Assembly (NCBI GenBank): GCA_964057225.1
Contig: OZ059899.1
Location: forward strand, 15,996,001-16,060,000
Length of the DNA: 64,000 nt
Reading direction: 5' to 3'
DNA from: Auanema rhodensis
Lineage: Eukaryota > Animalia > Nematoda
The notes under the pieces were generated by a model that saw only the letters and a program-made list of their open reading frames with translations, searched no databases and was not told where the DNA came from. The translations under genes were made by a program, and so were the position numbers. Position 1 is the stretch's first letter. The number at the start of each line of letters is the position of its first letter. Shown piece by piece: positions 829 through 64,000 of the stretch.

Positions 829-3800
829 TTCAGTCGTATGTTATATTTCAATTTGATCTTCGCAGTAGGGTAAAAACAATTTTAGCTACGTTGGAATGTC
901 AAAAAATATCTGATGAGAGTGGGATTCGAACCCACGCCTCCGAAGAGACTGGTGCCTTAAACCAGCGCCTTAGACCGCTCGGCCATCTCACCTTGATGTG
1001 ACTATTTCAGTCGTATGTTATATTTCAATTTGATCATCGCAATAGGGTAAAAACAATTTTAGCTACGTTGGAATGTCAAAAAATATCTGATGAGAGTGGG
1101 ATTCGAACCCACGCCTCCGAAGAGACTGGTGCCTTAAACCAGCGCCTTAGACCGCTCGGCCATCTCACCTTGATGTGGCATTTTCAGTCGTATGTTATAT
1201 TTCAATTTGATCTTCGCAGTAGGGTAAAAACAATTTTAGCTACGTTGGAATGTCAAAAAATATCTGATGAGAGTGGGATTCGAACCCACGCCTCCGAAGA
1301 GACTGGTGCCTAAAACCAGCGCCTTAGACCGCTAGGCCATCTCACCTTGATGTGACTATTTCAGTCGTATGTTATATTCGAATTTGATCATCGCAATAGG
1401 GTAAAAACAATTTTAACTACGTTGGAATGTCAAAAAATATCTGATGAGAGTGGGATTCGAACCCACGCCTCCGAAGAGACTGGTGCCTAAAACCAGCGCC
1501 TTAGACCGCTCGGCCATCTCACCTTGATGTGGCATTTTCAGTCGTATGTTATATTTCAATTTGATCATCGCAGTAGAGTAACAACAATTTTAGCTACGTT
1601 GGAATGTCAAAAAATATCTGATGAGAGTGGGATTCGAACCCACGCCTCCGAAGAGACTGGTGCCTTAAACCAGCGCCTTAGACCGCTCGGCCATCTCACC
1701 TTGATGTGACTATTTCGGTCGTATGTTATATTTGAATTTGATCATAGCAGTTGGGTAAAAACAATTTTAGCAACGTTGGAATGTCAAAAAATATCTGATG
1801 AGAGTGGGATTCGAACCCACGCCTCCGAAGAGACTGGTGCCTAAAACCAGCGCCTTAGACCGCTGGGCCATCTCACCTTGATGTGGCATTTTCAGTCGTA
1901 TGTTATATTTCAATTTGATCATCGCAGTAGAGTAAAAACAATTTTAGCTACGTTGGAATGTCAAAAAATATCTGATGAGAGTGGGATTCGAACCCACGCC
2001 TCCGAAGAGACTGGTGCCTTAAACCAGCGCCTTAGACCGCTCGGCCATCTCACCTTGATGTGACTATTTCGGTCGTATGTTATATTTGAATTTGATCATA
2101 GCAGTTGGGTAAAAACAATTTTAGCAACGTTGGAATGTCAAAAAATATCTGATGAGAGTGGGATTCGAACCCACGCCTCCGAAGAGACTGGTGCCTAAAA
2201 CCAGCGCCTTAGACCGCTCGGCCATCTCACCTTGATGTGACTATTTCAGTCGTATGTTATATTTCAATTTGATCATCGCAATAGGGTAAAAACAATTTTA
2301 GCTACGTTGGAATGTCAAAAAATATCTGATGAGAGTGGGATTCGAACCCACGCCTCCGAAGAGACTGGTGCCTAAAACCAGCGCCTTAGACCGCTCGGCC
2401 ATCTCACCTTGATGTGGCATTTTCAGTCGTATGTTATATTTCAATTTGATCATCGCAGTAGAGTAAAAACAATTTTAGCTACGTTGGAATGTCAAAAAAT
2501 ATCTGATGAGAGTGGGATTCGAACCCACGCCTCCGAAGAGACTGGTGCCTAAAACCAGCGCCTTAGACCGCTCGGCCATCTCACCTTGATGTGGCATTTT
2601 CAGTCGTATGTTATATTTCAATTTGATCATCGCAATAGGGTAAAAACAATTTTAGCTACGTTGGAATGTCAAAAAATATCTGATGAGAGTGGGATTCGAA
2701 CCCACGCCTCCGAAGAGACTGGTGCCTAAAACCAGCGCCTTAGACCGCTCGGCCATCTCACCTTGATGTGGCATTTTCAGTCGTATGTTATATTTCAATT
2801 TGATCATCGCAGTAGAGTAAAAACAATTTTAGCTACGTTGGAATGTCAAAAAATATCTAATGAGAGTGGGATTCGAACCCACGCCTCCGAAGAGACTGGT
2901 GCCTAAAACCAGCGCCTTAGACCGCTCGGCCATCTCACCTTGATGTGACTATTTCAGTCGTATGTTATATTCGAATTTGATCATCGCAGTAGGGTAAAAA
3001 CAATTTTAGCTACGTTGGAATGTCAAAAAATATCTGATGAGAGTGGGATTCGAACCCACGCCTCCGAAGAGACTGGTGCCTAAAACCAGCGCCTTAGACC
3101 GCTGGGCCATCTCACCTTGATGTGGCATTTTCAGTCGTATGTTATATTTCAATTTGATCATCGCAGTAGAGTAAAAACAATTTTAGCTACGTTGGAATGT
3201 CAAAAAATATCTGATGAGAGTGGGATTCGAACCCACGCCTCCGAAGAGACTGGTGCCTTAAACCAGCGCCTTAGACCGCTCGGCCATCTCACCTTGATGT
3301 GACTATTTCGGTCGTATGTTATATTTGAATTTGATCATAGCAGTTGGGTAAAAACAATTTTAGCAACGTTGGAATGTCAAAAAATATCTGATGAGAGTGG
3401 GATTCGAACCCACGCCTCCGAAGAGACTGGTGCCTAAAACCAGCGCCTTAGACCGCTCGGCCATCTCACCTTGATGTGACTATTTCAGTCGTATGTTATA
3501 TTTCAATTTGATCATCGCAATAGGGTATAAACAATTTTAGCTACGTTGGAATGTCAAAAAATATCTGATGAGAGTGGGATTCGAACCCACGCCTCCGAAG
3601 AGACTGGTGCCTAAAACCAGCGCCTTAGACCGCTCGGCCATCTCACCTTGATGTGGCATTTTCAGTCGTATGTTATATTTCAATTTGATCATCGCAGTAG
3701 AGTAAAAACAATTTTAGCTACGTTGGAATGTCAAAAAATATCTGATGAGAGTGGGATTCGAACCCACGCCTCCGAAGAGACTGGTGCCTTAAACCAGCGC

Positions 3801-6800
3801 CTTAGACCGCTCGGCCATCTCACCTTGATGTGACTATTTCAGTCGTATGTTATATTTCAATTTGATCATCGCAATAGGGTAAAAACAATTTTAGCTACGT
3901 TGGAATGTCAAAAAACATCTGATGAGAGTGGGATTCGAACCCACGCCTCCGAAGAGACTGGTGCCTTAAACCAGCGCCTTAGACCGCTCGGCCATCTCAC
4001 CTTGATGTGGCATTTTCAGTCGTATGTTATATTTCAATTTGATCTTCGCAGTAGGATAAAAACAATTTTAGCTTCGTTGGAATGTCAAAAAATATCTGAT
4101 GAGAGTGGGATTCGAACCCACGCCTCCGAAGAGACTGGTGCCTTAAACCAGCGCCTTAGACCGCTCGGCCATCTCACCTTGATGTGGCATTTTCAGTCGT
4201 ATGTTATATTTCAATTTGATCTTCGCAGTAGGGTAAAAACAATTTTAGCTTCGTTGGAATGTCAAAAAATATCTGATGAGAGTGGGATTCGAACCCACGC
4301 CTCCGAAGAGACTGGTGCCTAAAACCAGCGCCTTAGACCGCTCGGCCATCTCACCTTGATGTGACTATTTCAGTCGTATGTTATATTCGAATTTGATCAT
4401 CGCAGTAGGGTAAAAACAATTTTAGCTACGTTGGAATGTCAAAAAATATCTGATGAGAGTGGGATTCGAACCCACGCCTCCGAAGAGACTGGTGCCTAAA
4501 ACCAGCGCCTTAGACCGCTCGGCCATCTCACCTTGATGTGGCATTTTCAGTCGTATGTTATATTTCAATTTGATCATCGCAGTAGAGTAAAAACAATTTT
4601 AGCTACGTTGGAATGTCAAAAAATATCTGATGAGAGTGGGATTCGAACCCACGCCTCCGAAGAGACTGGTGCCTAAAACCAGCGCCTTAGACCGCTCGGC
4701 CATCTCACCTTGATGTGGCATTTTCAGTCGTATGTTATATTTCAATTTGATCATCGCAGTAGAGTAACAACAATTTTAGCTACGTTGGAATGTCAAAAAA
4801 TATCTGATGAGAGTGGGATTCGAACCCACGCCTCCGAAGAGACTGGTGCCTTAAACCAGCGCCTTAGACCGCTCGGCCATCTCACCTTGATGTGACTATT
4901 TCAGTCGTATGTTATATTTCAATTTGATCATCGGAATAGGGTAAAAACAATTTTAGCTACGTTGGAATGTCAAAAAATATCTGATGAGAGTGGGATTCGA
5001 ACCCACGCCTCCGAAGAGACTGGTGCCTAAAACCAGCGCCTTAGACCGCTCGGCCATCTCACCTTGATGTGGCATTTTCAGTCGTATGTTATATTTCAAT
5101 TTGATCTTCGCAGTAGGGTAAAAACAATTTTAGCTACGTTGGAATGTCAAAAAATATCTGATGAGAGTGGGATTCGAACCCACGCCTCCGAAGAGACTGG
5201 TGCCTTAAACCAGCGCCTTAGACCGCTCGGCCATCTCACCTTGATGTGACTATTTCAGTCGTATGTTATATTTCAATTTGATCTTCGCAGTAGGGTAAAA
5301 ACAATTTTAGCTACGTTGGAATGTCAAAAAACATTTGATGAGAGTGGGATTCGAACCCACGCCTCCGAAGAGACTGGTGCCTAAAACCAGCGCCTTAGAC
5401 CGCTCGGCCATCTCACCTTGATGTGACTATTTCAGTCGTATGTTATATTCGAATTTGATCATCGCAGTAGGGTAAAAACAATTTTAGCTACGTTGGAATG
5501 TCAAAAAATATCTGATGAGAGTGGGATTCGAACCCACGCCTCCGAAGAGACTGGTGCCTAAAACCAGCGCCTTAGACCGCTGGGCCATCTCACCTTGATG
5601 TGGCATTTTCAGTCGTATGTTATATTTCAATTTGATCATCGCAGTAGAGTAAAAACAATTTTAGCTACGTTGGAATGTCAAAAAATATCTGATGAGAGTG
5701 GGATTCGAACCCACGCCTCCGAAGAGACTGGTGCCTTAAACCAGCGCCTTAGACCGCTCGGCCATCTCACCTTGATGTGACTATTTCAGTCGTATGTTAT
5801 ATTTCAATTTGATCATCGCAATAGGGTAAAAACAATTTTAGCTACGTTGGAATGTCAAAAAACATCTGATGAGAGTGGGATTCGAACCCACGCCTCCGAA
5901 GAGACTGGTGCCTTAAACCAGCGCCTTAGACCGCTCGGCCATCTCACCTTGATGTGACTATTTCAGTCGTATGTTATATTTCAATTTGATCATCGCAATA
6001 GGGTAAAAACAATTTTAGCTACGTTGGAATGTCAAAAAACATCTGATGAGAGTGGGATTCGAACCCACGCCTCCGAAGAGACTGGTGCCTTAAACCAGCG
6101 CCTTAGACCGCTCGGCCATCTCACCTTGATGTGGCATTTTCAGTCGTATGTTATATTTCAATTTGATCTTCGCAGTAGGATAAAAACAATTTTAGCTTCG
6201 TTGGAATGTCAAAAAATATCTGATGAGAGTGGGATTCGAACCCACGCCTCCGAAGAGACTGGTGCCTTAAACCAGCGCCTTAGACCGCTCGGCCATCTCA
6301 CCTTGATGTGGCATTTTCAGTCGTATGTTATATTTCAATTTGATCTTCGCAGTAGGGTAAAAACAATTTTAGCTTCGTTGGAATGTCAAAAAATATCTGA
6401 TGAGAGTGGGATTCGAACCCACGCCTCCGAAGAGACTGGTGCCTAAAACCAGCGCCTTAGACCGCTCGGCCATCTCACCTTGATGTGACTATTTCAGTCG
6501 TATGTTATATTCGAATTTGATCATCGCAGTAGGGTAAAAACAATTTTAGCTACGTTGGAATGTCAAAAAATATCTGATGAGAGTGGGATTCCAACCCACG
6601 CCTCCGAAGAGACTGGTGCCTAAAACCAGCGCCTTAGACCGCTCGGCCATCTCACCTTGATGTGGCATTTTCAGTCGTATGTTATATTTCAATTTGATCA
6701 TCGCAGTAGAGTAAAAACAATTTTAGCTACGTTGGAATGTCAAAAAATATCTGATGAGAGTGGGATTCGAACCCACGCCTCCGAAGAGACTGGTGCCTAA

Positions 6801-7963
6801 AACCAGCGCCTTAGACCGCTCGGCCATCTCACCTTGATGTGACTATTTCAGTCGTATGTTATATTTCAATTTGATCATCGCAATAGGGTAAAAACAATTT
6901 TAGCTACGTTGGAATGTCAAAAAATATCTGATGAGAGTGGGATTCGAACCCACGCCTCCGAAGAGACTGGTGCCTTAAACCAGCGCCTTAGACCGCTCGG
7001 CCATCTCACCTTGATGTGGCATTTTCAGTCGTATGTTATATTTCAATTTGATCTTCGCAGTAGGGTAAAAACAATTTTAGCTACGTTGGAATGTCAAAAA
7101 ATATCTGATGAGAGTGGGATTCGAACCCACGCCTCCGAAGAGACTGGTGCCTAAAACCAGCGCCTTAGACCGCTCGGCCATCTCACCTTGATGTGACTAT
7201 TTCAGTCGTATGTTATATTCGAATTTGATCATCGCAGTAGGGTAAAAACAATTTTAGCTACGTTGGAATGTCAAAAAATATCTGATGAGAGTGGGATTCG
7301 AACCCACGCCTCCGAAGAGACTGGTGCCTTAAACCAGCGCCTTAGACCGCTCGGCCATCTCACCTTGATGTGGCATTTTCAGTCGTATGTTATATTTGAA
7401 TTTGATCATAGCAGTAGGGTAAAAACAATTTTAGCAACGTTGGAATGTCAAAAAATATCTGATGACAGTGGGATTCGAACCCACGCCTCCGAAGAGACTG
7501 GTGCCTTAAACCAGCGCCTTAGACCGCTCGGCCATCTCACCTTGATGTGACTATTTCAGTCGTATGTTATATTTCAATTTGATCATCGCAATAGGGTAAA
7601 AACAATTTTAGCTACGTTGGAATGTCAAAAAACATCTGATGAGAGTGGGATTCGAACCCACGCCTCCGAAGAGACTGGTGCCTTAAACCAGCGCCTTAGA
7701 CCGCTCGGCCATCTCACCTTGATGTGGCATTTTCAGTCGTATGTTATATTTCAATTTGATCATCGCAATAGGGTAAAAACAATTTTAGCTACGTTGGAAT
7801 GTCAAAAAACATCTGATGAGAGTGGGATTCGAACCCACGCCTCCGAAGAGACTGGTGCCTTAAACCAGCGCCTTAGACCGCTCGGCCATCTCACCTTGAT
7901 GTGGCATTTTCAGTCGTATGTTATATTTCAATTTGATCTTCGCAGTAGGGTAAAAACAATTTT
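829..7963 (-). tRNA. Tandem tRNA-Leu array block 1, 177-bp unit, about 40 genes, mixed AAG/TAG anticodons
   Basis: Each unit contains the reverse complement of GGTGAGATGGCCGAGCGGTCTAAGGCGCTGGTTT(A/T)AGGCACCAGTCTCTTCGGAGGCGTGGGTTCGAATCCCACTCTCATCA. First gene at 911, last at 7814, spacing 177. Confidence 0.97.
911..992 (-). tRNA. Representative tRNA-Leu(AAG) gene
   Basis: Acceptor stem GGTGAGA/TCTCATC plus discriminator A, A-box TGGCCGAGCGG, anticodon stem CTGGT/ACCAG with loop TTAAGGC, long variable arm, B-box GGTTCGAATCC, no encoded CCA, T6 terminator 5 nt downstream. Confidence 0.97.
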
Positions 7964-8312
7964 TGTGGCGTTATACCACAAGTGTATAGTATGGTTGGAA
8001 GTAAAACACAAAGCGAATATGTAGAAAAGGGTTTATTGATGAATTAACAAGACAAGCACGGAATAAAATCACTGACTGCGAACGTTCAAAAAGTAAGACT
8101 GATCTCTTCTCGTGGGCGGTCGTCAGCCTGAAACAAAGAGTTAGTCATGCCACATGTATAACACAACATGTGGTATGGATAAAAATTACTTAGGAAGTTA
8201 CAAGAAAGAAGAAAGAAGAGAGAGAGAGAGAGAGAGAGGGAGAGAACAGGAGAGACAAATAAAACAATTGTTGAAGATAAAATTTATACAAACTCACTCG
8301 CTTATCGCGACA
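7964..8312 (-). mobile_element. BEL/Pao 3' LTR (inverted), 349 bp
   Basis: Reverse complement of the LTRs at 9002 and 18028. TGT...ACA ends, followed on its own strand by target sequence AAAAT and preceded by PPT-like GCCGGGAG (8313..8320). Confidence 0.93.
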
Positions 8313-8342
8313 CTCCCGGCAATGCGGGAATGAGAAGAAGGC

Positions 8343-8804
8343 CTACAAAGGTCTTTTACGTTTTATATCACCACAAACCACTCCATGATGCGTATCCGCC
8401 TTACATCTATAGCAGGATACCTCGCAAATCGCTGGATGTTTTTGATTCAAACATCTGATGCATAACCCCAGTTCATGAAGACGGAGAGTGCGTTCCGGTG
8501 AGGAAGGATAAATCGGACAGGCCGCAGTACGGTGCCCATCAGCTGTCGGTTTATTGCAGAATACACATGAAGCTTTAGGAGCAGTCTGAATGGTCAAATT
8601 GTCTAGTTTTAGATTTAACGAATGTTGAATATTGTCCAGTCGTTCGGATAGATGGTTCACCGCGCTAGCTAGGTGCTCGTAGAGCCTCTTTTCAAGCACA
8701 ATTAGTTGCCTCAGATTGGCAGCAGTGTTAGGTAGATGGGAATATTTTTTGAGCTCTTCCTCAAAGGAAGCATTCTCAATTATATTCGAGACAATATCTT
8801 CCAT
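8343..8804 (-). CDS. Accessory ORF at the 3' end of the BEL element: predicted coiled coil plus three Cys/His (nucleocapsid-like) motifs, about 153 aa
   Basis: ATG in AAAATG context. Motifs CVFC..H..C, CIRC..H..C and CYRC..H..C parallel the Gag knuckles at about 19815-20005. C-terminal KRKR. Stop lies about 30 nt before the 3' LTR. Confidence 0.75.
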   Translation of the reverse strand: MEDIVSNIIENASFEEELKKYSHLPNTAANLRQLIVLEKRLYEHLASAVNHLSERLDNIQHSLNLKLDNLTIQTAPKASCVFCNKPTADGHRTAACPIYPSSPERTLRLHELGLCIRCLNQKHPAICEVSCYRCKADTHHGVVCGDIKRKRPL

Positions 8805-8887
8805 TTTCACGGAATATAGGAAATTGTTTTTACCCTATTGCGATGATCAAATTGAAATATAACATACGACTGAAATAGTCACATCAA

Positions 8888-8969
8888 GGTGAGATGGCCG
8901 AGCGGTCTAAGGCGCTGGTTTTAGGCACCAGTCTCTTCGGAGGCGTGGGTTCGAATCCCACTCTCATCA
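8888..8969 (+). tRNA. tRNA-Leu(TAG), single unit between the inversion junction (8821) and the solo LTR
   Basis: Anticodon loop TTTAGGC, intact A/B boxes and T6. Confidence 0.95.
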
Positions 8970-9001
8970 GATATTTTTTGACATTCCAACGTAGCTAAAA
9001 T

Positions 9002-9350
9002 TGTCGCGATAAGCGAGTGAGTTTGTATAAATTTTATCTTCAACAATTGTTTTATTTGTCTCTCCTGTTCTCTCCCTCTCTCTCTCTCTCTCTCTCTTCT
9101 TTCTTCTTTCTTGTAACTTCCTAAGTAATTTTTATCCATACCACATGTTGTGTTATACATGTGGCATGACTAACTCTTTGTTTCAGGCTGACGACCGCCC
9201 ACGAGAAGAGATCAGTCTTACTTTTTGAACGTTCGCAGTCAGTGATTTTATTCCGTGCTTGTCTTGTTAATTCATCAATAAACCCTTTTCTACATATTCG
9301 CTTTGTGTTTTACTTCCAACCATACTATACACTTGTGGTATAACGCCACA
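9002..9350 (+). mobile_element. BEL/Pao solo LTR with 5-bp TSD AAAAT
   Basis: TGTCGCG...CGCCACA flanked on both sides by AAAAT, with the array resuming in register. Internal (CT)n tract and AATAAA. Confidence 0.95.
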
Positions 9351-12300
9351 AAAATTGTTTTTACCCTACTGCGAAGATCAAATTGAAATATAACATACGA
9401 CTGAAAATGCCACATCAAGGTGAGATGGCCGAGCGGTCTAAGGCGCTGGTTTAAGGCACCAGTCTCTTCGGAGGCGTGGGTTCGCATCCCACTCTCATCA
9501 GATGTTTTTTGACATTCCAACGTAGCTAAAATTGTTTTTACCCTATTGCGATGATCAAATTGAAATATAACATACGACTGAAATAGTCACATCAAGGTGA
9601 GATGGCCGAGCGGTCTAAGGCGCTGGTTTTAGGCACCAGTCTCTTCGGAGGCGTGGGTTCGAATCCCACTCTCATCAGATGTTTTTTGACATTCCAACGT
9701 AGCTAAAATTGTTTTTACCCTACTGCGAAGATCAAATTGAAATATAACATACGACTGAAAATGCCACATCAAGGTGAGATGGCCGAGCGGTCTAAGGCGC
9801 TGGTTTAAGGCACCAGTCTCTTCGGAGGCGTGGGTTCGAATCCCACTCTCATCAGATGTTTTTTGACATTCCAACGTAGCTAAAATTGTTTTTACCCTAT
9901 TGCGATGATCAAATTGAAATATAACATACGACTGAAATAGTCACATCAAGGTGAGATGGCCGAGCGGTCTAAGGCGCTGGTTTAAGGCACCAGTCTCTTC
10001 GGAGGCGTGGGTTCGAATCCCACTCTCATCAGATATTTTTTGACATTCCAACGTAGCTAAAATTGTTTTTACTCTACTGCGATGATCAAATTCGAATATA
10101 ACATACGACTGAAATAGTCACATCAAGGTGAGATGGCCGAGCGGTCTAAGGCGCTGGTTTTAGGCACCAGTCTCTTCGGAGGCGTGGGTTCGAATCCCAC
10201 TCTCATCAGATATTTTTTGACATTCCAACGTAGCTAAAATTGTTTTTACCCTATTGCGATGATCAAATTGAAATATAACATACGACTGAAATAGTCACAT
10301 CAAGGTGAGATGGCCGAGCGGTCTAAGGCGCTGGTTTAAGGCACCAGTCTCTTCGGAGGCGTGGGTTCGAATCCCACTCTCATCAGATATTTTTTGACAT
10401 TCCAACGTAGCTAAAATTGTTTTTACCCTATTGCGATGATCAAATTGAAATATAACATACGACTGAAATAGTCACATCAAGGTGAGATGGCCGAGCGGTC
10501 TAAGGCGCTGGTTTTAGGCACCAGTCTCTTCGGAGGCGTGGGTTCGAATCCCACTCTCATCAGATATTTTTTGACATTCCAACGTAGCTAAAATTGTTTT
10601 TACTCTACTGCGATGATCAAATTGAAATATAACATACGACTGAAAATGCCACATCAAGGTGAGATGGCCGAGCGGTCTAAGGCGCTGGTTTTAGGCACCA
10701 GTCTCTTCGGAGGCGTGGGTTGGAATCCCACTCTCATCAGATATTTTTTGACATTCCAACGTAGCTAAAATTGTTTTTACCCTACTGCGATGATCAAATT
10801 CGAATATAACATACGACTGAAATAGTCACATCAAGGTGAGATGGCCGAGCGGTCTAAGGCGCTGGTTTTAGGCACCAGTCTCTTCGGAGGCGTGGGTTCG
10901 AATCCCACTCTCATCAGATATTTTTTGACATTCCAACGAAGCTAAAATTGTTTTTACCCTACTGCGAAGATCAAATTGAAATATAACATACGACTGAAAA
11001 TGCCACATCAAGGGGAGATGGCCGAGCGGTCTAAGGCGCTGGTTTAAGGCACCAGTCTCTTCGGAGGCGTGGGTTCGAATCCCACTCTCATCAGATATTT
11101 TTTGACATTCCAACGAAGCTAAAATTGTTTTTACCCTACTGCGAAGATCAAATTGAAATATAACATACGACTGAAAATGCCACATCAAGGTGAGATGGCC
11201 GAGCGGTCTAAGGCGCTGGTTTAAGGCACCAGTCTCTTCGGAGGCGTGGGTTCGAATCCCACTCTCATCAGATGTTTTTTGACATTCCAACGTAGCTAAA
11301 ATTGTTTTTACCCTATTGCGATGATCAAATTGAAATATAACATACGACTGAAATAGTCACATCAAGGTGAGATGGCCGAGCGGTCTAAGGCGCTGGTTTA
11401 AGGCACCAGTCTCTTCGGAGGCGTGGGTTCGAATCCCACTCTCATCAGATGTTTTTTGACATTCCAACGTAGCTAAAATTGTTTTTACCCTATTGCGATG
11501 ATCAAATTGAAATATAACATACGACTGAAATAGTCACATCAAGGTGAGATGGCCGAGCGGTCTAAGGCGCTGGTTTAAGGCACCAGTCTCTTCGGAGGCG
11601 TGGGTTCGCATCCCACTCTCATCAGATGTTTTTTGACATTCCAACGTAGCTAAAATTGTTTTTACCCTATTGCGATGATCAAATTGAAATATAACATACG
11701 ACTGAAATAGTCACATCAAGGTGAGATGGCCGAGCGGTCTAAGGCGCTGGTTTTAGGCACCAGTCTCTTCGGAGGCGTGGGTTCGAATCCCACTCTCATC
11801 AGATATTTTTTGACATTCCAACGTTGCTAAAATTGTTTTTACCCAACTGCTATGATCAAATTCAAATATAACATACGACCGAAATAGTCACATCAAGGTG
11901 AGATGGCCGAGCGGTCTAAGGCGCTGGTTTAAGGCACCAGTCTCTTCGGAGGCGTGGGTTCGAATCCCACTCTCATCAGATATTTTTTGACATTCCAACG
12001 TAGCTAAAATTGTTTTTACTCTACTGCGATGATCAAATTGAAATATAACATACGACTGAAAATGCCACATCAAGGTGAGATGGCCGAGCGGTCTAAGGCG
12101 CTGGTTTTAGGCACCAGTCTCTTCGGAGGCGTGGGTTCGAATCCCACTCTCATCAGATGTTTTTTGACATTCCAACGTAGCTAAAATTGTTTTTACCCTA
12201 CTGCGAAGATCAAATTGAAATATAACATACGACTGAAATAGTCACATCAAGGTGAGATGGCCGAGCGGTCTAAGGCGCTGGTTTAAGGCACCAGTCTCTT

Positions 12301-18027: not shown

Positions 18028-18094
18028 TGTCGCGATAAGCGAGTGAGTTTGTATAAATTTTATCTTCAACAATTGTTTTATTTGTCTCTCCTGT

Positions 18095-18125
<31 letters not shown>

Positions 18126-18377: not shown

Positions 18378-18380
18378 AAT

Positions 18381-53353: not shown

Positions 53354-56300
53354 TTCAGTCGTATGTTATATTTCAATTTGATTTTCGCAAAAGGGTAAAA
53401 ACAATTTTAGCTACGTTGGAATGTCAAAAAATATCTGATGAGAGTGGGATTCGAACCCACGCCTCCGAAGAGACTGGTGCCTTAAACCAGCGCCTTAGAC
53501 CGCTCGGCCATCTCACCTTGATGTGACTATTTCAGTCGTATGTTATATTTCAATTTGATCATCGCAATAGGGTAAAAACAATTTTAGCTACGTTGGAATG
53601 TCAAAAAATATCTGATGAGAGTGGGATTCGAACCCACGCCTCCGAAGAGACTGGTGCCTTAAACCAGCGCCTTAGACCGCTCGGCCATCTCACCTTGATG
53701 TGACTATTTCAGTCGTATGTTATATTTCAATTTGATCATCGCAATAGGGTAAAAACAATTTTAGCTACGTTGGAATGTCAAAAAATATCTGATGAGAGTG
53801 GGATTCAAACCCACGCCTCCGAAGAGACTGGTGCCTTAAACCAGCGCCTTAGACTGCTCGGCCATCTCACCTTGATGTGACTATTTCAGTCGTATGTTAT
53901 ATTTCAATTTGATCATCGCAGTAGGGTAAAAACAATTTTAGCTACGTTGGAATGTCAAAAAATATCTGATGAGAGTGGGATTCGATCCCACGCCTCCGAA
54001 GAGACTGGTGCCTTAAACCAGCGCCTTAGACCGCTCGGCCATCTCACCTTGATGTGACTATTTCAGTCGTATGTTATATTTGAATTTGATCATCGCAGTA
54101 GGGTAAAAACAATGTTAGCAACGTTGGAATGCCAAAAAATATCTGATGAGAGTGGGATTCGAACCCACGCCTCCGAAGAGACTGGTGCCTTAAACCAGCG
54201 CCTTAGACCGCTCGGCCATCTCACCTTGATGTGACTATTTCAGTCGTATGTTATATTCGAATTTGATCATCGCAGTAGGGTAAAAACAATTTTAGCTACG
54301 TTGGAATGTCAAAAAATATCTGATGAGAGTGGGATTCGAACCCACGCCTCCGAAGAGACTGGTGCCTTAAACCAGCGCCTTAGACCGCTCGGCCATCTCA
54401 CCTTGATGTGACTATTTCAGTCGTATGTTATATTTCAATTTGATCATCGCAATAGGGTAAAAACAATTTTAGCTACGTTGGAATGTCAAAAAATATCTGA
54501 TGAGAGTGGGATTCAAACCCACGCCTCCGAAGAGACTGGTGCCTTAAACCAGCGCCTTAGACTGCTCGGCCATCTCACCTTGATGTGACTATTTCAGTCG
54601 TATGTTATATTTCAATTTGATCATCGCAATAGGGTAAAAACAATTTTAGCTACGTTGGAATGTCAAAAAATATCTGATGAGAGTGGGATTCGAACCCACG
54701 CCTCCGAAGAGACTGGTGCCTTAAACCAGCGCCTTAGACCGCTCGGCCATCTCACCTTGATGTGGCAGTTTCAGTCGTATGTTATATTTCAATTTGATCA
54801 TCGCAATAGGGTAAAAACAATTTTAGCTACGTTGGAATGTCAAAAAATATCTGATGAGAGTGGGATTCGAACCCACGCCTCCGAAGAGACTGGTGCCTAA
54901 AACCAGCGCCTTAGACCGCTCGGCCATCTCACCTTGATGTGACTATTTCAGTCGTATGTTATATTCGAATTTGATCACCGCAGTAGGGTAAAAACAATTT
55001 TAGCTACGTTGGAATGTCAAAAAATATCTGATGAGAGTGGGATTCGAACCCACGCCTCCGAAGAGACTGGTGCCTAAAACCAGCGCCTTAGACCGCTCGG
55101 CCATCTCACCTTGATGTGACTATTTCAGTCGTATGTTATATTCGAATTTGATCATCGCAGTAGGGTAAAAACAATTTTAGCTACGTTGGAATGTCAAAAA
55201 ATATCTGATGAGAGTGGGATTCGAACCCACGCCTCCGAAGAGACTGGTGCCTTAAACCAGCGCCTTAGACCGCTCGGCCATCTCACCTTGATGTGACTAT
55301 TTCAGTCGTATGTTATATTTCAATTTGATCATCGCAATAGGGTAACAACAATTTTAGCTACGTTGGAATGTCAAAAAATATCTGATGAGAGTGGGATTCG
55401 AACCCACGCCTCCGAAGAGACTGGTGCCTTAAACCAGCGCCTTAGACCGCTCGGCCATCTCACCTTGATGTGACTATTTCAGTCGTATGTTATATTTCAA
55501 TTTGATCATCGCAATAGGGTAAAAACAATTTTAGCTACGTTGGAATGTCAAAAAATATCTGATGAGAGTGGGATTCGAACCCACGCCTCCGAAGAGACTG
55601 GTGCCTAAAACCAGCGCCTTAGACCGCTCGGCCATCTCACCTTGATGTGGCATTTTCAGTCGTATGTTATATTTCAATTTGATCATCGCAATAGGGTAAA
55701 AACAATTTTAGCTACGTTGGAATGTCAAAAAATATTTGATGAGAGTGGGATTCGAACCCACGCCTCCGAAGAGACTGGTGCCTAAAACCAGCGCCTTAGA
55801 CCGCTCGGCCATCTCACCTTGATGTGACTATTTCAGTCGTATGTTATATTTCAATTTGATCATCGCAATAGGGTAAAAACAATTTTAGCTACGTTGGAAT
55901 GTCAAAAAATATCTGATGAGAGTGGGATTCGAACCCACGCCTCCGAAGAGACTGGTGCCTAAAACCAGCGCCTTAGACCGCTCGGCCATCTCACCTTGAT
56001 GTGACTATTTCAGTCGTATGTTATATTCGAATTTGATCATCGCAGTAGGGTAAAAACAATTTTAGCTACGTTGGAATGTCAAAAAATATCTGATGAGAGT
56101 GGGATTCGAACCCACGCCTCCGAAGAGACTGGTGCCTTAAACCAGCGCCTTAGACCGCTCGGCCATCACACCTTGATGTGACTATTTCAGTCGTATGTTA
56201 TATTTCAATTTGATCATCGCAATAGGGTAAAAACAATTTTAGCTACGTTGGAATGTCAAAAAATATCTGATGAGAGTGGGATTCGAACCCACGCCTCCGA

Positions 56301-59040
56301 AGAGACTGGTGCCTTAAACCAGCGCCTTAGACCGCTCGGCCATCTCACCTTGATGTGGCATTTTCAGTCGTATGTTATATTTCAATTTGATCTTCGCAGT
56401 AGGGTAAAAACAATTTTAGCTACGTTGGAATGTCAAAAAATATCTGATGAGAGTGGGATTCGAACCCACGCCTCCGAAGAGACTGGTGCCTAAAACCAGC
56501 GCCTTAGACCGCTCGGCCATCTCACCTTGATGTGACTATTTCATGTCGTATGTTATATTCGAATTTGATCATCGCAGTAGGGTAAAAACAATTTTAGCTA
56601 CGTTGGAATGTCAAAAAATATTTGATGAGAGTGGGATTCGAACCCACGCCTCCGAAGAGACTGGTGCCTAAAACCAGCGCCTTAGACCGCTCGGCCATCT
56701 CACCTTGATGTGACTATTTCAGTCGTATGTTATATTTCAATTTGATCATCGCAATAGGGTAAAAACAATTTTAGCTACGTTGGAATGTCAAAAAATATCT
56801 GATGAGAGTGGGATTCGAACCCACGCCTCCGAAGAGACTGGTGCCTAAAACCAGCGCCTTAGACCGCTCGGCCATCTCACCTTGATGTGACTATTTCAGT
56901 CGTATGTTATATTCGAATTTGATCATCGCAGTAGGGTAAAAACAATTTTAGCTACGTTGGAATGTCAAAAAATATCTGATGAGAGTGGGATTCGAACCCA
57001 CGCCTCCGAAGAGACTGGTGCCTTAAACCAGCGCCTTAGACCGCTCGGCCATCACACCTTGATGTGACTATTTCAGTCGTATGTTATATTTCAATTTGAT
57101 CATCGCAATAGGGTAAAAACAATTTTAGCTACGTTGGAATGTCAAAAAATATCTGATGAGAGTGGGATTCGAACCCACGCCTCCGAAGAGACTGGTGCCT
57201 TAAACCAGCGCCTTAGACCGCTCGGCCATCTCACCTTGATGTGGCATTTTCAGTCGTATGTTATATTTCAATTTGATCTTCGCAGTAGGGTAAAAACAAT
57301 TTTAGCTACGTTGGAATGTCAAAAAATATCTGATGAGAGTGGGATTCGAACCCACGCCTCCGAAGAGACTGGTGCCTAAAACCAGCGCCTTAGACCGCTC
57401 GGCCATCTCACCTTGATGTGACTATTTCATGTCGTATGTTATATTCGAATTTGATCATCGCAGTAGGGTAAAAACAATTTTAGCTACGTTGGAATGTCAA
57501 AAAATATCTGATGAGAGTGGGATTCGAACCCACGCCTCCGAAGAGACTGGTGCCTAAAACCAGCGCCTTAGACCGCTCGGCCATCTCACCTTGATGTGAC
57601 TATTTCAGTCGTATGTTATATTTCAATTTGATCATCGCAATAGGGTAAAAACAATTTTAGCTACGTTGGAATGTCAAAAAATATCTGATGAGAGTGGGAT
57701 TCGAACCCACGCCTCCGAAGAGACTGGTGCCTAAAACCAGCGCCTTAGACCGCTCGGCCATCTCACCTTGATGTGACTATTTCAGTCGTATGTTATATTC
57801 GAATTTGATCATCGCAGTAGGGTAAAAACAATTTTAGCTACGTTGGAATGTCAAAAAATATCTGATGAGAGTGGGATTCGATCCCACGCCTCCGAAGAGA
57901 CTGGTGCCTTAAACCAGCGCCTTAGACCGCTCGGCCATCTCACCTTGATGTGACTATTTCAGTCGTATGTTATATTCGAATTTGATCATCGCAGTAGGGT
58001 AAAAACAATTTTAGCTACGTTGGAATGTCAAAAAATATCTGATGAGAGTGGGATTCGATCCCACGCCTCCGAAGAGACTGGTGCCTTAAACCAGCGCCTT
58101 AGACCGCTCGGCCATCTCACCTTGATGTGACTATTTCAGTCGTATGTTATATTTCAATTTGATCATCGCAATAGGGTAAAAACAATTTTAGCTAAGTTGA
58201 AATGTCAAAAAATATCTGATGAGAGTGGGATTCGAACCCACGCCTCCGAAGAGACTGGTGCCTTAAACCAGCGCCTTAGACCGCTCGGCCATCTCACCTT
58301 GATGTGACTATTTCAGTCGTATGTTATATTCGAATTTGATTATCGTAGTAGGGTAAAAACAATTTTAGCTACGTTGGAATGTCAAAAAATATCTGATGAG
58401 AGTGGGATTCGATCCCACGCCTCCGAAGAGACTGGTGCCTTAAACCAGCGCCTTAGACCGCTCGGCCATCTCACCTTGATGTGACTATTTCAGTCGTATG
58501 TTATATTCGAATTTGATCATCGCAGTAGGGTAAAAACAATTTTAGCTAAGTTGAAATGTCAAAAAATATCTGATGAGAGTGGGATTCGAACCCACGCCTC
58601 CGAAGAGACTGGTGCCTTAAACCAGCGCCTTAGACCGCTCGGCCATCTCACCTTGATATGACTATTTCAGTCGTATGTTATATTCGAATTTGATCATCGC
58701 AGTAGGGTAAAAACAATTTTAGCTACGTTGGAATGTCAAAAAATATCTGATGAGAGTGGGATTCGAACCCACGCCTCCGAAGAGACTGGTGCCTAAAACC
58801 AACGCCTTAGACCGCTCGGCCATCTCACCTTGATGTGACTATTTCAGTCGTATGTTATATTTGAATTTGATCATAACAGTAGGGTAAAAACAATTTTAGC
58901 TACGTTGGAATGTCAAAAAATATCTGATGAGAGTGGGATTCGAACCCACGCCTCCGAAGAGACTGGTGCCTTAAACCAGCGCCTTAGACCGCTCGGCCAT
59001 CTCACCTTGATGTGGCATTTTCAGTCCTATGTTATATTTC
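53354..59040 (-). tRNA. tRNA-Leu array block 9, about 32 genes
   Basis: Same unit. The first 8 genes are all AAG. Confidence 0.97.
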
Positions 59041-60627
59041 AAAAAACCTTCTGTTTCGCATGTTTTCTTTTTGTGGAGCTGTTGCATACATGAAAAGTGT
59101 TCATTAAAGATGTTAAGTAATCGTTCTAACTGATCTTTTGATAATGATTTTCAAATTGCTGAGAGTGTGTGATGGATCAATATTGTAAATGAAATGAAAT
59201 ATTAAATTTTAAATATGCTAGTTTACTGACCTTATTAATGCTCTTGTTGTTTGATTTTTGTAGCTACGGCACTTTATGAAAGTGAGTAGTAGCGTTCCTG
59301 TTGTCCCCCTGGCCCTGGTATCAGAATCTCGTCATCTGAATCGGCTGTTGAGCTATAATGAAAATTGATTACAAATCGAGGTATTTGAAACCTATTCCAT
59401 GTCGTAGTAGTTTCTCTTACGGTTCGTTTTCGAAAATTGAGAACCAAATCTTCTGTGATCAAACTTTGATCCGTCAGCTGGTCTCAATTGCTCAGCTTGT
59501 ACATCTCGCACTGTTCTCTCATTTCTTTTTCGTTCCAGATTTTCCACGATCGCTCTTTTGTTCGTTTCGTTTTCTAACGATATGAAGACAGCTAGCCTGG
59601 AACAAAAATATAATATTTTGTTTCTCAAACTTAAGAAACCTGTGTTGGCATAGAGCATGCTTAGGGCAATTTCGTTGCGTGCATCCCGGACTGGAGCATA
59701 CAAGCTCATTATTGGTCTCATTGACACATCCCAATCTGGAATAACAATGATAAACTCAAAATAAAAAATCTTAGCTTATGCTCCCGTACTGTCCTTGGTG
59801 AAATATATGCCTGCCTTTGCAGCAGGAAATACTTCCAAACGCTGAACAGTTTCAAAAAACATGTCCGCATTGCTGGTCCCGACTGGCTCACTCATCCATG
59901 ATGGATAGCTTGACAACGAATTTTCAAAAATGAAATCACTCAAACCGAAAAGTTTGAGCTTATTCATTTTTTCAATGCGTGTCATTACTAACCACTCATG
60001 GTTTTCAACATGAAAATGAGTGACCAGTTTGTCGGATTTCTGATGAACGGCTCCAATTCGTTCTTTAATTTCTTCTATAAAAAAATTACTAGTTATTTTC
60101 ATTATGTTTTGATTACCTTCATGTAGTTGTAGCATTTTTTCTAGAACTTGATGAGCCGGAATAGGGTGAGGTATTCTAGCGTTCAATTGAGAATTCTTCG
60201 ACTCCAACAAGCTTGTTGAAAAAAATTGTTGGCTTTGCCCAGCTCTCAATTTTTGAATCAAACTATTGGTTTGATATAAATCGTCCTTGTTGGTAAGAAG
60301 CCTAAATTAAAAAAAAATAAAATAATTCAAAAAAAACCAACCATTGTCGAGTTCTTTCTCCACAATTCCTTACAATATCTTGGATTTTCCTTTCATATTC
60401 ATCACGGTTTTGTGATGATAGAGCCCCTTTCCTCATGATCGTTCCATATTCAGTCTTAAAACATAAAAATAGTGTTTAAAAACAATATCAAGTATACCTC
60501 TTTTTTTCTTCCAAATATTTTATGGAGGATGTGTTCCTTTCTCTCAGCATCATCGTCCTTGCCGAATGTGCTTTTGATATTCTCCATTCGGTGCACGGAA
60601 CATCTTAGCGGTACGGTACGGTACGAG
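59041..60627 (-). mobile_element. Second truncated copy of the MULE-like insert
   Basis: Duplicate of 51767..53353 at offset 7274. Confidence 0.7.
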
Positions 60628-63600
60628 TTCAGTCGTATGTTATATTTCAATTTGATTTTCGCAAAAGGGTAAAAACAATTTTAGCTACGTTGGAATGTCA
60701 AAAAATATCTGATGAGAGTGGGATTCGAACCCACGCCTCCGAAGAGACTGGTGCCTTAAACCAGCGCCTTAGACCGCTCGGCCATCTCACCTTGATGTGA
60801 CTATTTCAGTCGTATGTTATATTTCAATTTGATCATCGCAATAGGGTAAAAACAATTTTAGCTACGTTGGAATGTCAAAAAATATCTGATGAGAGTGGGA
60901 TTCGAACCCACGCCTCCGAAGAGACTGGTGCCTTAAACCAGCGCCTTAGACCGCTCGGCCATCTCACCTTGATGTGACTATTTCAGTCGTATGTTATATT
61001 TCAATTTGATCATCGCAATAGGGTAAAAACAATTTTAGCTACGTTGGAATGTCAAAAAATATCTGATGAGAGTGGGATTCAAACCCACGCCTCCGAAGAG
61101 ACTGGTGCCTTAAACCAGCGCCTTAGACTGCTCGGCCATCTCACCTTGATGTGACTATTTCAGTCGTATGTTATATTTCAATTTGATCATCGCAGTAGGG
61201 TAAAAACAATTTTAGCTACGTTGGAATGTCAAAAAATATCTGATGAGAGTGGGATTCGATCCCACGCCTCCGAAGAGACTGGTGCCTTAAACCAGCGCCT
61301 TAGACCGCTCGGCCATCTCACCTTGATGTGACTATTTCAGTCGTATGTTATATTTGAATTTGATCATCGCAGTAGGGTAAAAACAATGTTAGCAACGTTG
61401 GAATGCCAAAAAATATCTGATGAGAGTGGGATTCGAACCCACGCCTCCGAAGAGACTGGTGCCTTAAACCAGCGCCTTAGACCGCTCGGCCATCTCACCT
61501 TGATGTGACTATTTCAGTCGTATGTTATATTCGAATTTGATCATCGCAGTAGGGTAAAAACAATTTTAGCTACGTTGGAATGTCAAAAAATATCTGATGA
61601 GAGTGGGATTCGAACCCACGCCTCCGAAGAGACTGGTGCCTTAAACCAGCGCCTTAGACCGCTCGGCCATCTCACCTTGATGTGACTATTTCAGTCGTAT
61701 GTTATATTTCAATTTGATCATCGCAATAGGGTAAAAACAATTTTAGCTACGTTGGAATGTCAAAAAATATCTGATGAGAGTGGGATTCAAACCCACGCCT
61801 CCGAAGAGACTGGTGCCTTAAACCAGCGCCTTAGACTGCTCGGCCATCTCACCTTGATGTGACTATTTCAGTCGTATGTTATATTTCAATTTGATCATCG
61901 CAATAGGGTAAAAACAATTTTAGCTACGTTGGAATGTCAAAAAATATCTGATGAGAGTGGGATTCGAACCCACGCCTCCGAAGAGACTGGTGCCTTAAAC
62001 CAGCGCCTTAGACCGCTCGGCCATCTCACCTTGATGTGGCAGTTTCAGTCGTATGTTATATTATAATTTGATCATCGCAGTAGGGTAAAAACAATTTTAG
62101 CTACGTTGGAATGTCAAAAAATATCTGATGAGAGTGGGATTCGAACCCACGCCTCCGAAGAGACTGGTGCCTAAAACCAGCGCCTTAGACCGCTCGGCCA
62201 TCTCACCATGATGTGACTATTTCAGTCGTATGTTATATTTCAATTTGATCATCGCAATAGGGTAAAAACAATTTTAGCTACGTTGGAATGTCAAAAAATA
62301 TCTGATGAGAGTGGGATTCGAACCCACGCCTCCGAAGAGACTGGTGCCTTAAACCAGCGCCTTAGACCGCTCGGCCATCTCACCTTGATGTGGCAGTTTC
62401 AGTCGTATGTTATATTATAATTTGATCATCGCAGTAGGGTAAAAACAATTTTAGCTACGTTGGAATGTCAAAAAATATCTGATGAGAGTGGGATTCGAAC
62501 CCACGCCTCCGAAGAGACTGGTGCCTTAAACCAGCGCCTTAGACCGCTCGGCCATCACACCTTGATGTGACTATTTCAGTCGTATGTTATATTTCAATTT
62601 GATCATCGCAATAGGGTAAAAACAATTTTAGCTACGTTGGAATGTCAAAAAATATCTGATGAGAGTGGGATTCGAACCCACGCCTCCGAAGAGACTGGTG
62701 CCTTAAACCAGCGCCTTAGACCGCTCGGCCATCTCACCTTGATGTGGCATTTTCAGTCGTATGTTATATTTCAATTTGATCTTCGCAGTAGGGTAAAAAC
62801 AATTTTAGCTACGTTGGAATGTCAAAAAATATCTGATGAGAGTGGGATTCGAACCCACGCCTCCGAAGAGACTGGTGCCTAAAACCAGCGCCTTAGACCG
62901 CTCGGCCATCTCACCTTGATGTGACTATTTCATGTCGTATGTTATATTCGAATTTGATCATCGCAGTAGGGTAAAAACAATTTTAGCTACGTTGGAATGT
63001 CAAAAAATATCTGATGAGAGTGGGATTCGAACCCACGCCTCCGAAGAGACTGGTGCCTAAAACCAGCGCCTTAGACCGCTCGGCCATCTCACCTTGATGT
63101 GACTATTTCAGTCGTATGTTATATTTCAATTTGATCATCGCAATAGGGTAAAAACAATTTTAGCTAAGTTGAAATGTCAAAAAATATCTGATGAGAGTGG
63201 GATTCGAACCCACGCCTCCGAAGAGACTGGTGCCTTAAACCAGCGCCTTAGACCGCTCGGCCATCTCACCTTGATGTGACTATTTCAGTCGTATGTTATA
63301 TTCGAATTTGATTATCGTAGTAGGGTAAAAACAATTTTAGCTACGTTGGAATGTCAAAAAATATCTGATGAGAGTGGGATTCGATCCCACGCCTCCGAAG
63401 AGACTGGTGCCTTAAACCAGCGCCTTAGACCGCTCGGCCATCTCACCTTGATGTGACTATTTCAGTCGTATGTTATATTCGAATTTGATCATCGCAGTAG
63501 GGTAAAAACAATTTTAGCTAAGTTGAAATGTCAAAAAATATCTGATGAGAGTGGGATTCGAACCCACGCCTCCGAAGAGACTGGTGCCTTAAACCAGCGC

Positions 63601-64000
63601 CTTAGACCGCTCGGCCATCTCACCTTGATATGACTATTTCAGTCGTATGTTATATTCGAATTTGATCATCGCAGTAGGGTAAAAACAATTTTAGCTACGT
63701 TGGAATGTCAAAAAATATCTGATGAGAGTGGGATTCGAACCCACGCCTCCGAAGAGACTGGTGCCTAAAACCAACGCCTTAGACCGCTCGGCCATCTCAC
63801 CTTGATGTGACTATTTCAGTCGTATGTTATATTTGAATTTGATCATAACAGTAGGGTAAAAACAATTTTAGCTACGTTGGAATGTCAAAAAATATCTGAT
63901 GAGAGTGGGATTCGAACCCACGCCTCCGAAGAGACTGGTGCCTTAAACCAGCGCCTTAGACCGCTCGGCCATCTCACCTTGATGTGGCATTTTCAGTCCT
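60628..64000 (-). tRNA. tRNA-Leu array block 10, about 19 genes, mostly AAG
   Basis: Same unit, running to the window edge. Confidence 0.97.

What the first reader, a model, noticed from the sequence alone, without database searches (positions are those of the whole stretch)
829..64000. tRNA-gene satellite: about 225 mostly intact tRNA-Leu genes in a 177-bp, nucleosome-length tandem unit
Seen: each monomer is a complete Pol III unit with TATAA near -30, CAA at -3, A and B boxes, a full cloverleaf and a T6 terminator, plus a 95-bp spacer. Most variation lies in the spacer. Known: animal isoacceptor families usually have tens of mostly dispersed genes. Inference: this copy number exceeds translational need, so the array may be structural (TFIIIC/condensin platform, insulator, chromosome-end or pairing element) or germline-restricted DNA, since programmed DNA elimination of tandem repeats occurs in several nematode lineages.
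Basis: partly seen in the sequence, partly recalled or inferred. Interest (0 to 1): 0.8.

Follow-up and report, generated by a model that had tools for sequence, protein, structure and literature searches.

The report
Amplified tRNA-Leu gene arrays, nematode
The window holds 226 near-identical leucine tRNA genes, repeated every 177 bases in ten blocks broken up by retrotransposons and copies of a gene fragment. Arrays of this kind were recently reported in a related nematode, so it is a striking example of a known thing, not a new kind of element.

Summary
ARAGORN and Rfam each find 226 tRNA-Leu genes (57-61 bits against a cut-off of 29) in a 177-bp unit of an 82-nt gene plus a 95-nt spacer. 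TATAA at -30, CAA at -3 and a T6 terminator are each present in 85-99% of units.

It is not one satellite. There are ten blocks in both orientations, covering 63% of the window. They are interrupted by a truncated Pao/BEL retroelement, solo LTRs, two copies of a 3.6-kb LTR element, and five copies of a 5'-truncated gene fragment. That fragment's best relative is an Auanema protein.

Two Leu isoacceptors (126 TAG, 99 AAG, 1 TAA) share one tRNA body and are mixed in near-random order. Spacer subfamilies differ at 10 sites, while the tRNA body has no difference between them. Rare variants are as common in the gene as in the spacer, and 16% of copies are damaged. So the family was constrained, but single copies drift.

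Best reading: a recently amplified, Pol III-competent tRNA gene family in a clade V nematode, grown by unequal exchange and segmental duplication. Germline restriction is plausible, because Auanema rhodense has tRNA arrays in eliminated DNA, but it cannot be tested here. Nothing supports a structural role.

The parts
1..828 (-). Element A, partial copy cut by the window edge (3' part of the gene fragment)
   Evidence: 100% identical to 28652-27825
829..7963 (-). tRNA-Leu array block, 40 genes
7964..8312 (-). Solo LTR of the Pao/BEL-like element
   Evidence: 98.9% identical to the 5' LTR at 18031-18379 and 100% to 9350-9002
8313..8820 (-). Fragment of a second Pao-like gag (155-aa ORF at 8343-8810 with Cys/His knuckles)
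   Evidence: E 8e-6 against the gag zinc-knuckle region of the ORF at 19202-23419
8821..9001 (+). Single tRNA-Leu(TAG) unit (gene at 8888-8969)
9002..9350 (+). Solo LTR (TG..CA ends) in a spacer, flanked by a 5-bp duplication AAAAT
   Evidence: read directly
9351..18030 (+). tRNA-Leu array block, 49 genes
18031..25398 (+). Pao/BEL LTR retroelement: 5' LTR at 18031-18379, a primer-binding-site-like TGG just after the LTR, gag-pol ORF at 19202-23419, and an integrase C-terminus plus Phlebovirus-G2-like env ORF from 23386. It is 3'-truncated with no 3' LTR and is joined to mid-tRNA at 25399.
   Evidence: Pfam Peptidase_A17 1.6e-40, DUF1759, Integrase_H2C2, DUF5641 and Phlebovirus_G2 4e-13; relatives in clade V nematodes
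25399..27824 (+). tRNA-Leu array block: a 47-nt 3' tRNA piece plus 13 genes
27825..29735 (+). Element A, long form. It holds a 5'-truncated spliced gene fragment (exons about 27835-27957, 27998-28111, 28151-28669, 28717-28811 and 28856-29060) and then a 129-nt inverted repeat (29350-29478 / 29609-29737).
29736..32667 (-). tRNA-Leu array block, 16 genes (15 TAG)
32668..36232 (+). Non-autonomous LTR element, copy 1. It has 345-bp direct LTRs that are 100% identical, a primer-binding-site-like TGG after the 5' LTR, a purine tract before the 3' LTR, and a GAAT target duplication in the spacer. No Pfam domain was found.
36233..37478 (-). tRNA-Leu array block, 7 genes
37479..41042 (+). Non-autonomous LTR element, copy 2 (99.9% identical to copy 1; part of a 4.8-kb tandem duplication)
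41043..41253 (-). One tRNA-Leu unit plus a 17-nt 3' tRNA stub; the orientation flips at about 41253/41254
41254..43990 (+). tRNA-Leu array block, 15 genes (includes the one TAA copy at 41849)
43991..45901 (-). Element A, long form, inverted copy (99.8% identical to 27825-29735)
45902..51757 (-). tRNA-Leu array block, 33 genes
51758..53353 (-). Element A, short form (1.6 kb)
53354..59031 (-). tRNA-Leu array block, 32 genes; together with the adjacent element A it forms a 7274-bp higher-order unit
59032..60627 (-). Element A, short form
60628..64000 (-). tRNA-Leu array block, 19 genes, running off the window

Best explanation
This is a recently and repeatedly amplified family of ordinary-looking cytosolic tRNA-Leu genes in a clade V (rhabditine) nematode genome. 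Each 177-bp unit carries what RNA polymerase III needs: internal A and B boxes, an upstream TATA-like box, and a T6 terminator five bases after the gene.

Shown by the sequence: the family grew by unequal exchange between units and by tandem and inverted segmental duplication, which dragged along a gene fragment and LTR-element insertions.

Inferred: the tRNA body was under functional constraint while the spacer subfamilies diverged. The only common polymorphism inside the gene switches it between two working leucine isoacceptors (A34, read as inosine, and U34). The family is now so redundant that single copies accumulate damage neutrally. The region behaves like a repeat-permissive compartment of the kind described for tandem ncRNA gene arrays in Auanema rhodense. 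No structural function is needed to explain it.
For: There are 226 full-length tRNA-Leu genes with high covariance-model scores. Of these, 166 have an identical body. A73, the long variable arm and all stem pairs are intact in the consensus. The Pol III flanking signals are kept in 85-99% of units.

Three major spacer subfamilies (73, 60 and 58 copies) plus a minor one differ at 10 spacer sites and at 0 of 81 tRNA-body sites (P = 0.002 if differences fell uniformly). Each subfamily contains both anticodon alleles. Variants in the gene reach lower copy numbers than spacer variants (Mann-Whitney p = 2.7e-4).

Rare variants are equally frequent in gene and spacer (19 and 21), and 36 copies are damaged.

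Growth by duplication is visible. Monomer-type strings are shared between blocks. A 7274-bp unit repeats with 2 mismatches over about 4.3 kb. Element A occurs five times at 99.5-100% identity, and inverted blocks share diverged monomer order.

The insertions are real: there are target-site duplications, and the LTRs of the 3.6-kb element are 100% identical to each other.

The taxon evidence is as follows. Introns are about 45 bp. The retroelement integrase/env has its best relatives in strongylids. The gene fragment's best relative is in Auanema sp. JU1783.

A precedent exists in bioRxiv 10.64898/2026.08.27.747507.
Against: No expression, Pol III occupancy or read-depth data are available, so 'Pol III-competent' rests on sequence signals alone.

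The zero-difference result for the tRNA body could partly reflect gene conversion from a few master copies rather than selection.

The equal density of rare variants could include sequencing or assembly errors.

The species is not identified. The Auanema match is weak (32% identity, E 1e-7). tRNA density here is 46% inside arrays, higher than the under-20% per 10 kb reported for A. rhodense ncRNA arrays.
Confidence: 0.7

Rival explanations
1. The arrays lie in germline-restricted DNA that is removed from somatic cells by programmed DNA elimination. They are then either silent passengers or a germline and early-embryo tRNA supply. This reading is compatible with the best explanation and adds a location and a fate.
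For: In A. rhodense, tandem arrays of several tRNAs, 5S and U2 sit in eliminated DNA, and half of the eliminated protein genes are TE-related. The window is repeat-rich, TE-invaded and carries only a gene fragment, whose best relative is an Auanema protein.
Against: The species is unknown. The window has no telomere repeat or break-site evidence. No depth data are available. tRNA density differs from the A. rhodense description. Many nematodes with repeat-rich chromosome arms do not eliminate DNA.
Confidence: 0.3
2. The array is a dead satellite that merely derives from a tRNA gene. It is not transcribed, and its intactness only reflects very recent amplification.
For: Recent mutations show no bias against the gene (19 and 21 rare variants). 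About two thirds of the distinct variant types break a pair or a universal base, close to what random mutation would give. The array tolerates TE insertions, inversions and truncated genes.
Against: Spacer subfamilies have diverged at 10 sites with no change in the tRNA body. The single common change inside the gene is a synonymous isoacceptor switch, present on every spacer background. The Pol III signals in the otherwise variable spacer are retained.
Confidence: 0.15
3. The array has a structural or chromatin role: a TFIIIC/condensin loading platform, a boundary element, or a meiotic pairing or chromosome-end element.
For: Known biology (from my own knowledge, not tested here): tRNA genes and TFIIIC sites act as boundaries and condensin sites in yeasts. 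[quoted passage not shown] B boxes are intact in at least 207 of 226 copies.
Against: Nothing in the sequence calls for such a role. The blocks lie in both orientations and are interrupted, which does not suggest a selected architecture. No telomere repeats are present.
Confidence: 0.07
4. The copy number or the palindromic layout is an assembly artefact, from over-expansion or foldback chimeras.
For: Some arms are 100% identical: 7964-8312 against 9350-9002, and 1-828 against 28652-27825. One orientation flip is a blunt junction inside a tRNA.
Against: The inverted and tandem blocks share monomer order but have diverged by insertions, deletions and variant changes. Each block has its own variant string. 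The TE insertions have target-site duplications.
Confidence: 0.07

Closest known systems
Tandem ncRNA gene arrays (several tRNAs, 5S rRNA, U2) in germline-restricted DNA of Auanema rhodense (bioRxiv 10.64898/2026.08.27.747507)
   Same: A rhabditine nematode with thousands of mostly intact tRNA loci in tandem blocks. The repeat units there span 167-504 bp, a range that includes 177 bp. The surroundings are repeat- and TE-rich with few genes. The window's gene fragment has its best relative in the same genus.
   Different: The species of the window is unknown and elimination is untested. The paper reports ncRNA density under 20% per 10 kb, against 46% inside these arrays. The paper's tables naming the tRNA types were not available.
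Entamoeba histolytica tRNA gene arrays
   Same: Tandem units each holding complete tRNA genes, making up a sizeable share of the DNA; a structural role has been proposed but not shown.
   Different: [quoted passage not shown] Here the unit is a single-gene 177-bp repeat, in an animal, with no sign of a chromosome end.
Xenopus 3.18-kb tRNA repeat and oocyte-type 5S rRNA arrays; zebrafish tRNA clusters (the Xenopus details are from my own knowledge; zebrafish and Xenopus clusters per PMC2888827)
   Same: Pol III genes amplified in tandem to hundreds or thousands of copies in an animal. The oocyte 5S genes are a model for stage-restricted use of an amplified array.
   Different: Vertebrate tRNA clusters are mostly mixed in amino-acid type and have longer units. 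Here a single isotype has two anticodons on one body.
tRNA anticodon shifts (Rogers and Griffiths-Jones, RNA 2014, PMC3923123)
   Same: A single change at position 34 converts one gene copy into another isoacceptor on the same body.
   Different: Here the two states coexist at 126:99 inside one array and on every spacer background, rather than as an isolated shifted paralogue. I did not read that paper beyond its abstract.
tRNA-derived SINEs and tRNA-derived plant satellites (from my own knowledge)
   Same: Repeats that start from a tRNA sequence.
   Different: Those are degenerate and lack a full cloverleaf and terminator. SINEs are dispersed and carry tails and target duplications. Here the genes are complete and lie head to tail at a fixed period.

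Membership tests
Eukaryotic cytosolic tRNA-Leu gene (type II tRNA) | Cloverleaf that scores above the curated threshold | tested here: met
   All 226 are above the RF00005 gathering score of 29; at least the best 150 score 56.8-60.9 bits. ARAGORN calls all 226 as Leu.
Eukaryotic cytosolic tRNA-Leu gene (type II tRNA) | Long variable arm, discriminator A73, U33, and Leu anticodons | tested here: met
   The Rfam alignment shows a 10-nt variable-arm insertion with a CUC/GAG stem and a terminal A. Anticodons are 126 TAG, 99 AAG and 1 TAA.
Eukaryotic cytosolic tRNA-Leu gene (type II tRNA) | Pol III signals: internal A and B boxes and a downstream T-run terminator | tested here: met
   The exact B-box string occurs 207 times. 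A T run of at least 6 starts at +5 in 221/225 units, and TATAA at -30 is present in 222/225.
Eukaryotic cytosolic tRNA-Leu gene (type II tRNA) | Transcribed, processed and charged with leucine | not testable with these tools
   No expression data are available; tRNAscan-SE eukaryotic isotype models are not on hand.
Satellite-type tandem repeat | Head-to-tail copies at a fixed period with a higher-order repeat structure | tested here: met
   The period is 177 bp at 96-97% identity. A 7274-bp higher-order unit and shared monomer strings are present.
Satellite-type tandem repeat | One uninterrupted array over the stated span | tested here: not met
   There are ten blocks on both strands, and 37% of the window is other sequence.
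Germline-restricted (programmed-elimination) DNA of rhabditine nematodes | Lower or absent read depth in somatic DNA | not testable with these tools
   No reads are available and the species is not identified.
Germline-restricted (programmed-elimination) DNA of rhabditine nematodes | Bounded by the palindromic break motif with new telomere addition | not tested
   The motif is given only as a figure in the paper. There are no TTAGGC repeats in the window, and the window may lie inside such a region.
tRNA-derived SINE | Dispersed copies with a 3' tail and target-site duplications, and a degenerate tRNA part | tested here: not met
   The units are contiguous with a constant 95-nt spacer and complete genes.
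Pao/BEL LTR retrotransposon (the inserted element at 18031-25398) | Peptidase_A17, a DUF1759 gag, integrase, and LTRs with TG..CA ends | tested here: met
   Pfam matches; the LTR and primer-binding-site-like sequence were read directly. The 3' LTR is missing because the element is truncated at 25398.

The most novel reading that the evidence does not exclude
The arrays are germline-restricted batteries of Pol III genes. They would supply both CUN-reading leucine tRNAs to the germline and early embryo and then be discarded from somatic cells by programmed DNA elimination. That would make them a nematode counterpart of the oocyte-type 5S genes of Xenopus, with array-level selection keeping the gene intact while single copies drift.
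Probability: 0.1. Interest if true: 0.75.

Novelty: new member of a known kind. Interest (0 to 1): 0.4.

Why it matters
If the source species eliminates DNA, this array gives a clean test of whether amplified ncRNA genes in eliminated DNA are used or are only passengers. The array carries its own tags that tRNA sequencing and Pol III ChIP could follow: the position-57 and position-63 variants and the trailer sequence. The 126:99 mix of two isoacceptors on one body also shows how an anticodon switch behaves under concerted evolution. Beyond that, it is a well-resolved example of array growth by unequal exchange and of LTR elements landing in tRNA spacers.

Tried and rejected
- A fuzzy-regex scan for the gene timed out and was replaced by blastn.
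- The minimum-free-energy fold of one gene is not a cloverleaf. This is usual for single-sequence folding, so the covariance-model alignment was used instead.
- An exact scan of metagenome contigs for a 46-nt spacer string found nothing.
- The word search with exon 3 of the gene fragment was blank. It sees only proteins of 95-300 aa, so the full library search was then run.
- The Auanema contig (L001) and a Logan contig (L002) that encode relatives of the fragment have no tRNA genes and no DNA similarity to the window. Species identification therefore failed.
- The gag-pol ORF has only a 31% best hit.
- The supplementary tables of the A. rhodense preprint are not held.
- A permissive Rfam search found no other RNA family in the spacer.
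- There are no telomere repeats.
- Anticodon order within blocks is close to random (128 like-neighbour pairs against 120 +/- 6.4 in shuffles), so there is no alternating design.
- tRNA-targeted integration by the LTR elements was considered. It is left open because the three Pao LTR copies share one junction and probably reflect duplication of a single insertion.
- The exons of the gene fragment were searched one by one by reference. The joined (spliced) protein was not built or searched.


Full report
OBSERVATION

Tandem Repeats Finder reports a 177-bp period at 96-97% identity in eight stretches between 829 and 63998. ARAGORN tRNA-Leu genes. Rfam's tRNA model gives 226 matches above gathering, at least the best 150 of them scoring 56.8-60.9 bits against a gathering score of 29. 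The unit is an 82-nt gene plus a 95-nt spacer, and 197 of 215 clean units are exactly 177 bp.

The Rfam alignment shows a seven-pair acceptor stem, a long variable arm with a CUC/GAG stem, a canonical T loop and a terminal A73. Read against the consensus unit, TATAA lies at -30..-26, CAA at -3..-1, and a T6 run starts at +5. These are present in 222, 192 and 221 of 225 units respectively.

The span is not one array. There are ten blocks, six on the minus strand and four on the plus strand. Arrays cover 63% of the window and tRNA sequence covers 29%. The rest consists of four kinds of sequence.

- A Pao/BEL LTR retroelement at 18031-25398. It has a 349-bp TG..CA LTR and a primer-binding-site-like TGG just after it. 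Its gag-pol ORF matches Peptidase_A17 at 1.6e-40, DUF1759 and Integrase_H2C2. A second ORF carries the integrase C-terminus (DUF5641) and a Phlebovirus-G2-like envelope domain. The element is cut off inside that second ORF, lacks a 3' LTR, and is joined to the middle of a tRNA at 25399.
- Two solo LTRs of the same element, at 7964-8312 and 9002-9350. The second is flanked by a 5-bp duplication (AAAAT) of spacer sequence. Between them lies a gag-like fragment of a second Pao-type element.
- Two 99.9%-identical copies of a 3.57-kb element with 345-bp direct LTRs that are 100% identical. It has a primer-binding-site-like TGG, a purine tract and a GAAT target duplication, but no recognisable protein domain.
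- Five copies (1.6-1.9 kb, 99.5-100% identical) of what I call element A.

ELEMENT A

It contains a spliced reading frame with introns of about 45 bp that end in TTTTAAG, ATTTAG or TTCCAG, which is nematode style. Pfam and the word search gave nothing for its largest exon. The word search sees only proteins of 95-300 aa, so I ran the full library search.

The best hit is CAI4220887.1 of Auanema sp. JU1783, a 629-aa protein (E 1.2e-7, 32% identity). By tblastn, residues 393-431 and 473-613 of that protein align to 27835-27954 and 28158-28625. The alignment begins 10 bp from the junction with the tRNA array.

Element A is therefore the 3' part of a gene that was cut off at the array and then copied along with it.

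TAXON

The best relatives of the integrase/env ORF are all clade V strongylids (Ancylostoma, Oesophagostomum, Necator and Haemonchus, at 38-45% identity). The gag-pol ORF has its best hit in Trichostrongylus at 31%. With the intron style and the Auanema match, the source is most likely a rhabditine nematode.

No protein encoded in the window is present in the public collections searched, so the species is not identified. The sequence is not human.

STATE OF THE GENES

Of the 226 genes, 166 have the identical body (96 with TAG, 70 with AAG). Another 24 carry changes that leave every pair and universal base intact. The remaining 36 have a broken stem pair, a changed universal base (for example T54 to A in 9 copies) or an indel.

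Anticodons are 126 TAG, 99 AAG and 1 TAA. The two main types differ only at position 34. They are mixed within blocks in near-random order (128 like-neighbour pairs against 120 +/- 6.4 in shuffles).

CONSTRAINT

Diversity is 0.0074 per site in the tRNA body (position 34 excluded) and 0.050 in the spacer. Clustering the spacers gives three large subfamilies (73, 60 and 58 copies) and a small one. Their majority sequences differ at 10 spacer sites and at none of the 81 body sites, which has P = 0.002 if differences fell uniformly. Each subfamily holds both anticodon alleles. Variants in the gene also reach lower copy numbers than variants in the spacer (Mann-Whitney p = 2.7e-4).

By contrast, rare variants (present in at most two copies) number 19 over the 82 gene sites and 21 over the 95 spacer sites. 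About two thirds of the distinct variant types in the gene are damaging, roughly what random mutation would give.

My reading is inference. The gene was kept intact while the family diversified, and the one change allowed to become common turns it into another working leucine isoacceptor. Individual copies are now too redundant to be policed. Gene conversion from a few master copies could contribute to the first pattern, and read errors to the second.

HOW IT GREW

Coding each unit by its variant type shows that blocks share runs of the same order with local gains and losses. At the right end, a unit of 7274 bp (element A plus about 32 genes) is repeated. About 4.3 kb of it differs by only two bases between copies.

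Blocks 25399-32667 and 41254-48400 are inverted copies around element A, and they have since diverged in monomer order. Blocks 829-7963 and 9351-18030 are likewise inverted relatives, not a perfect palindrome. One orientation flip is a blunt junction inside a tRNA at about 41253. Another coincides with a 129-nt inverted repeat at the end of element A.

These features point to unequal exchange plus tandem and inverted segmental duplication, all very recent. They also argue against a trivial assembly artefact, although only read-level data can settle that.

COMPARISON WITH WHAT IS KNOWN

Large tRNA gene numbers and clusters are known in Entamoeba, zebrafish, Xenopus and Nematostella (PMC2888827). 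[quoted passage not shown]

The closest case is a 2026 preprint on Auanema rhodense. Its 180-Mb germline genome has 19,554 tRNA loci, of which only 215 are called pseudogenes. Among its germline-restricted tandem repeats are arrays of 5S rRNA, several tRNAs and U2. Repeat units range from 167 to 504 bp. The authors suggest that eliminated regions are places of weak selective surveillance where repeats pile up.

The window fits that picture in content: ncRNA gene arrays, TE-related genes and a gene fragment. It differs in density, and its species and somatic fate are unknown. The paper's tables that list the tRNA types were not available.

VERDICT

Redundancy is consistent with the neutral drift of single copies, and germline restriction has a close precedent but is untested here. 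A structural role has no support in the sequence.

The feature is a new member of a known kind: tandemly amplified Pol III gene arrays. Its interest is moderate. It lies in the two isoacceptors interleaved on one body and in the contrast between family-level constraint and copy-level drift, and it would rise if the array proves to be germline-restricted and expressed.

Noticed in passing
window 18031-25398: A Pao/BEL retroelement carrying a Phlebovirus-G2-like envelope domain fused downstream of the integrase C-terminus. The closest relatives with the same layout are in strongylid nematodes. The element is cut inside the env ORF and joined to mid-tRNA.
   Followed up: partly
window 9002-9350, 18031-18379 and 7964-8312: All three Pao LTR copies share the same junction in the tRNA spacer, about 30 nt downstream of the gene, with an AAAAT duplication. 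The other LTR element sits 13-17 nt downstream of a tRNA. This may be one duplicated insertion or a preference for tRNA flanks; it is undecided.
   Followed up: partly
window 8343-8810 (-): A 155-aa ORF with Cys/His knuckles that aligns to the gag zinc-knuckle region of the Pao element (E 8e-6). It is a fragment of a second, different element lying between two inverted solo LTRs.
   Followed up: yes
window 29350-29478 / 29609-29737 (and the mirror copy near 44000-44380): A 129-nt inverted repeat, 97% complementary, around a short (TTGGTAAAC)n tract at the 3' end of element A, exactly where the array orientation flips. The short form of element A ends inside its first arm.
   Followed up: partly
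window 53790, 54498, 61064, 61772 (-): Four tRNA copies carry the same two changes together, at gene position 17 (D-loop G) and position 65 (T-loop C), which lie near the D-loop/T-loop contact. Their spacing (708 bp and 7274 bp) shows a single double mutant that was copied, not independent co-variation.
   Followed up: yes
window 8217-8245, 9069-9097, 18095-18125: An (AG)n/(TC)n microsatellite of about 29 bp inside each Pao LTR copy.
   Followed up: no
window 32668-36232 and 37479-41042: A 3.57-kb LTR element with identical 345-bp LTRs that do not begin with TG or end with CA and that enclose no recognisable coding domain. It is probably a non-autonomous element that inserted very recently and was then duplicated together with seven tRNA units.
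   Followed up: partly
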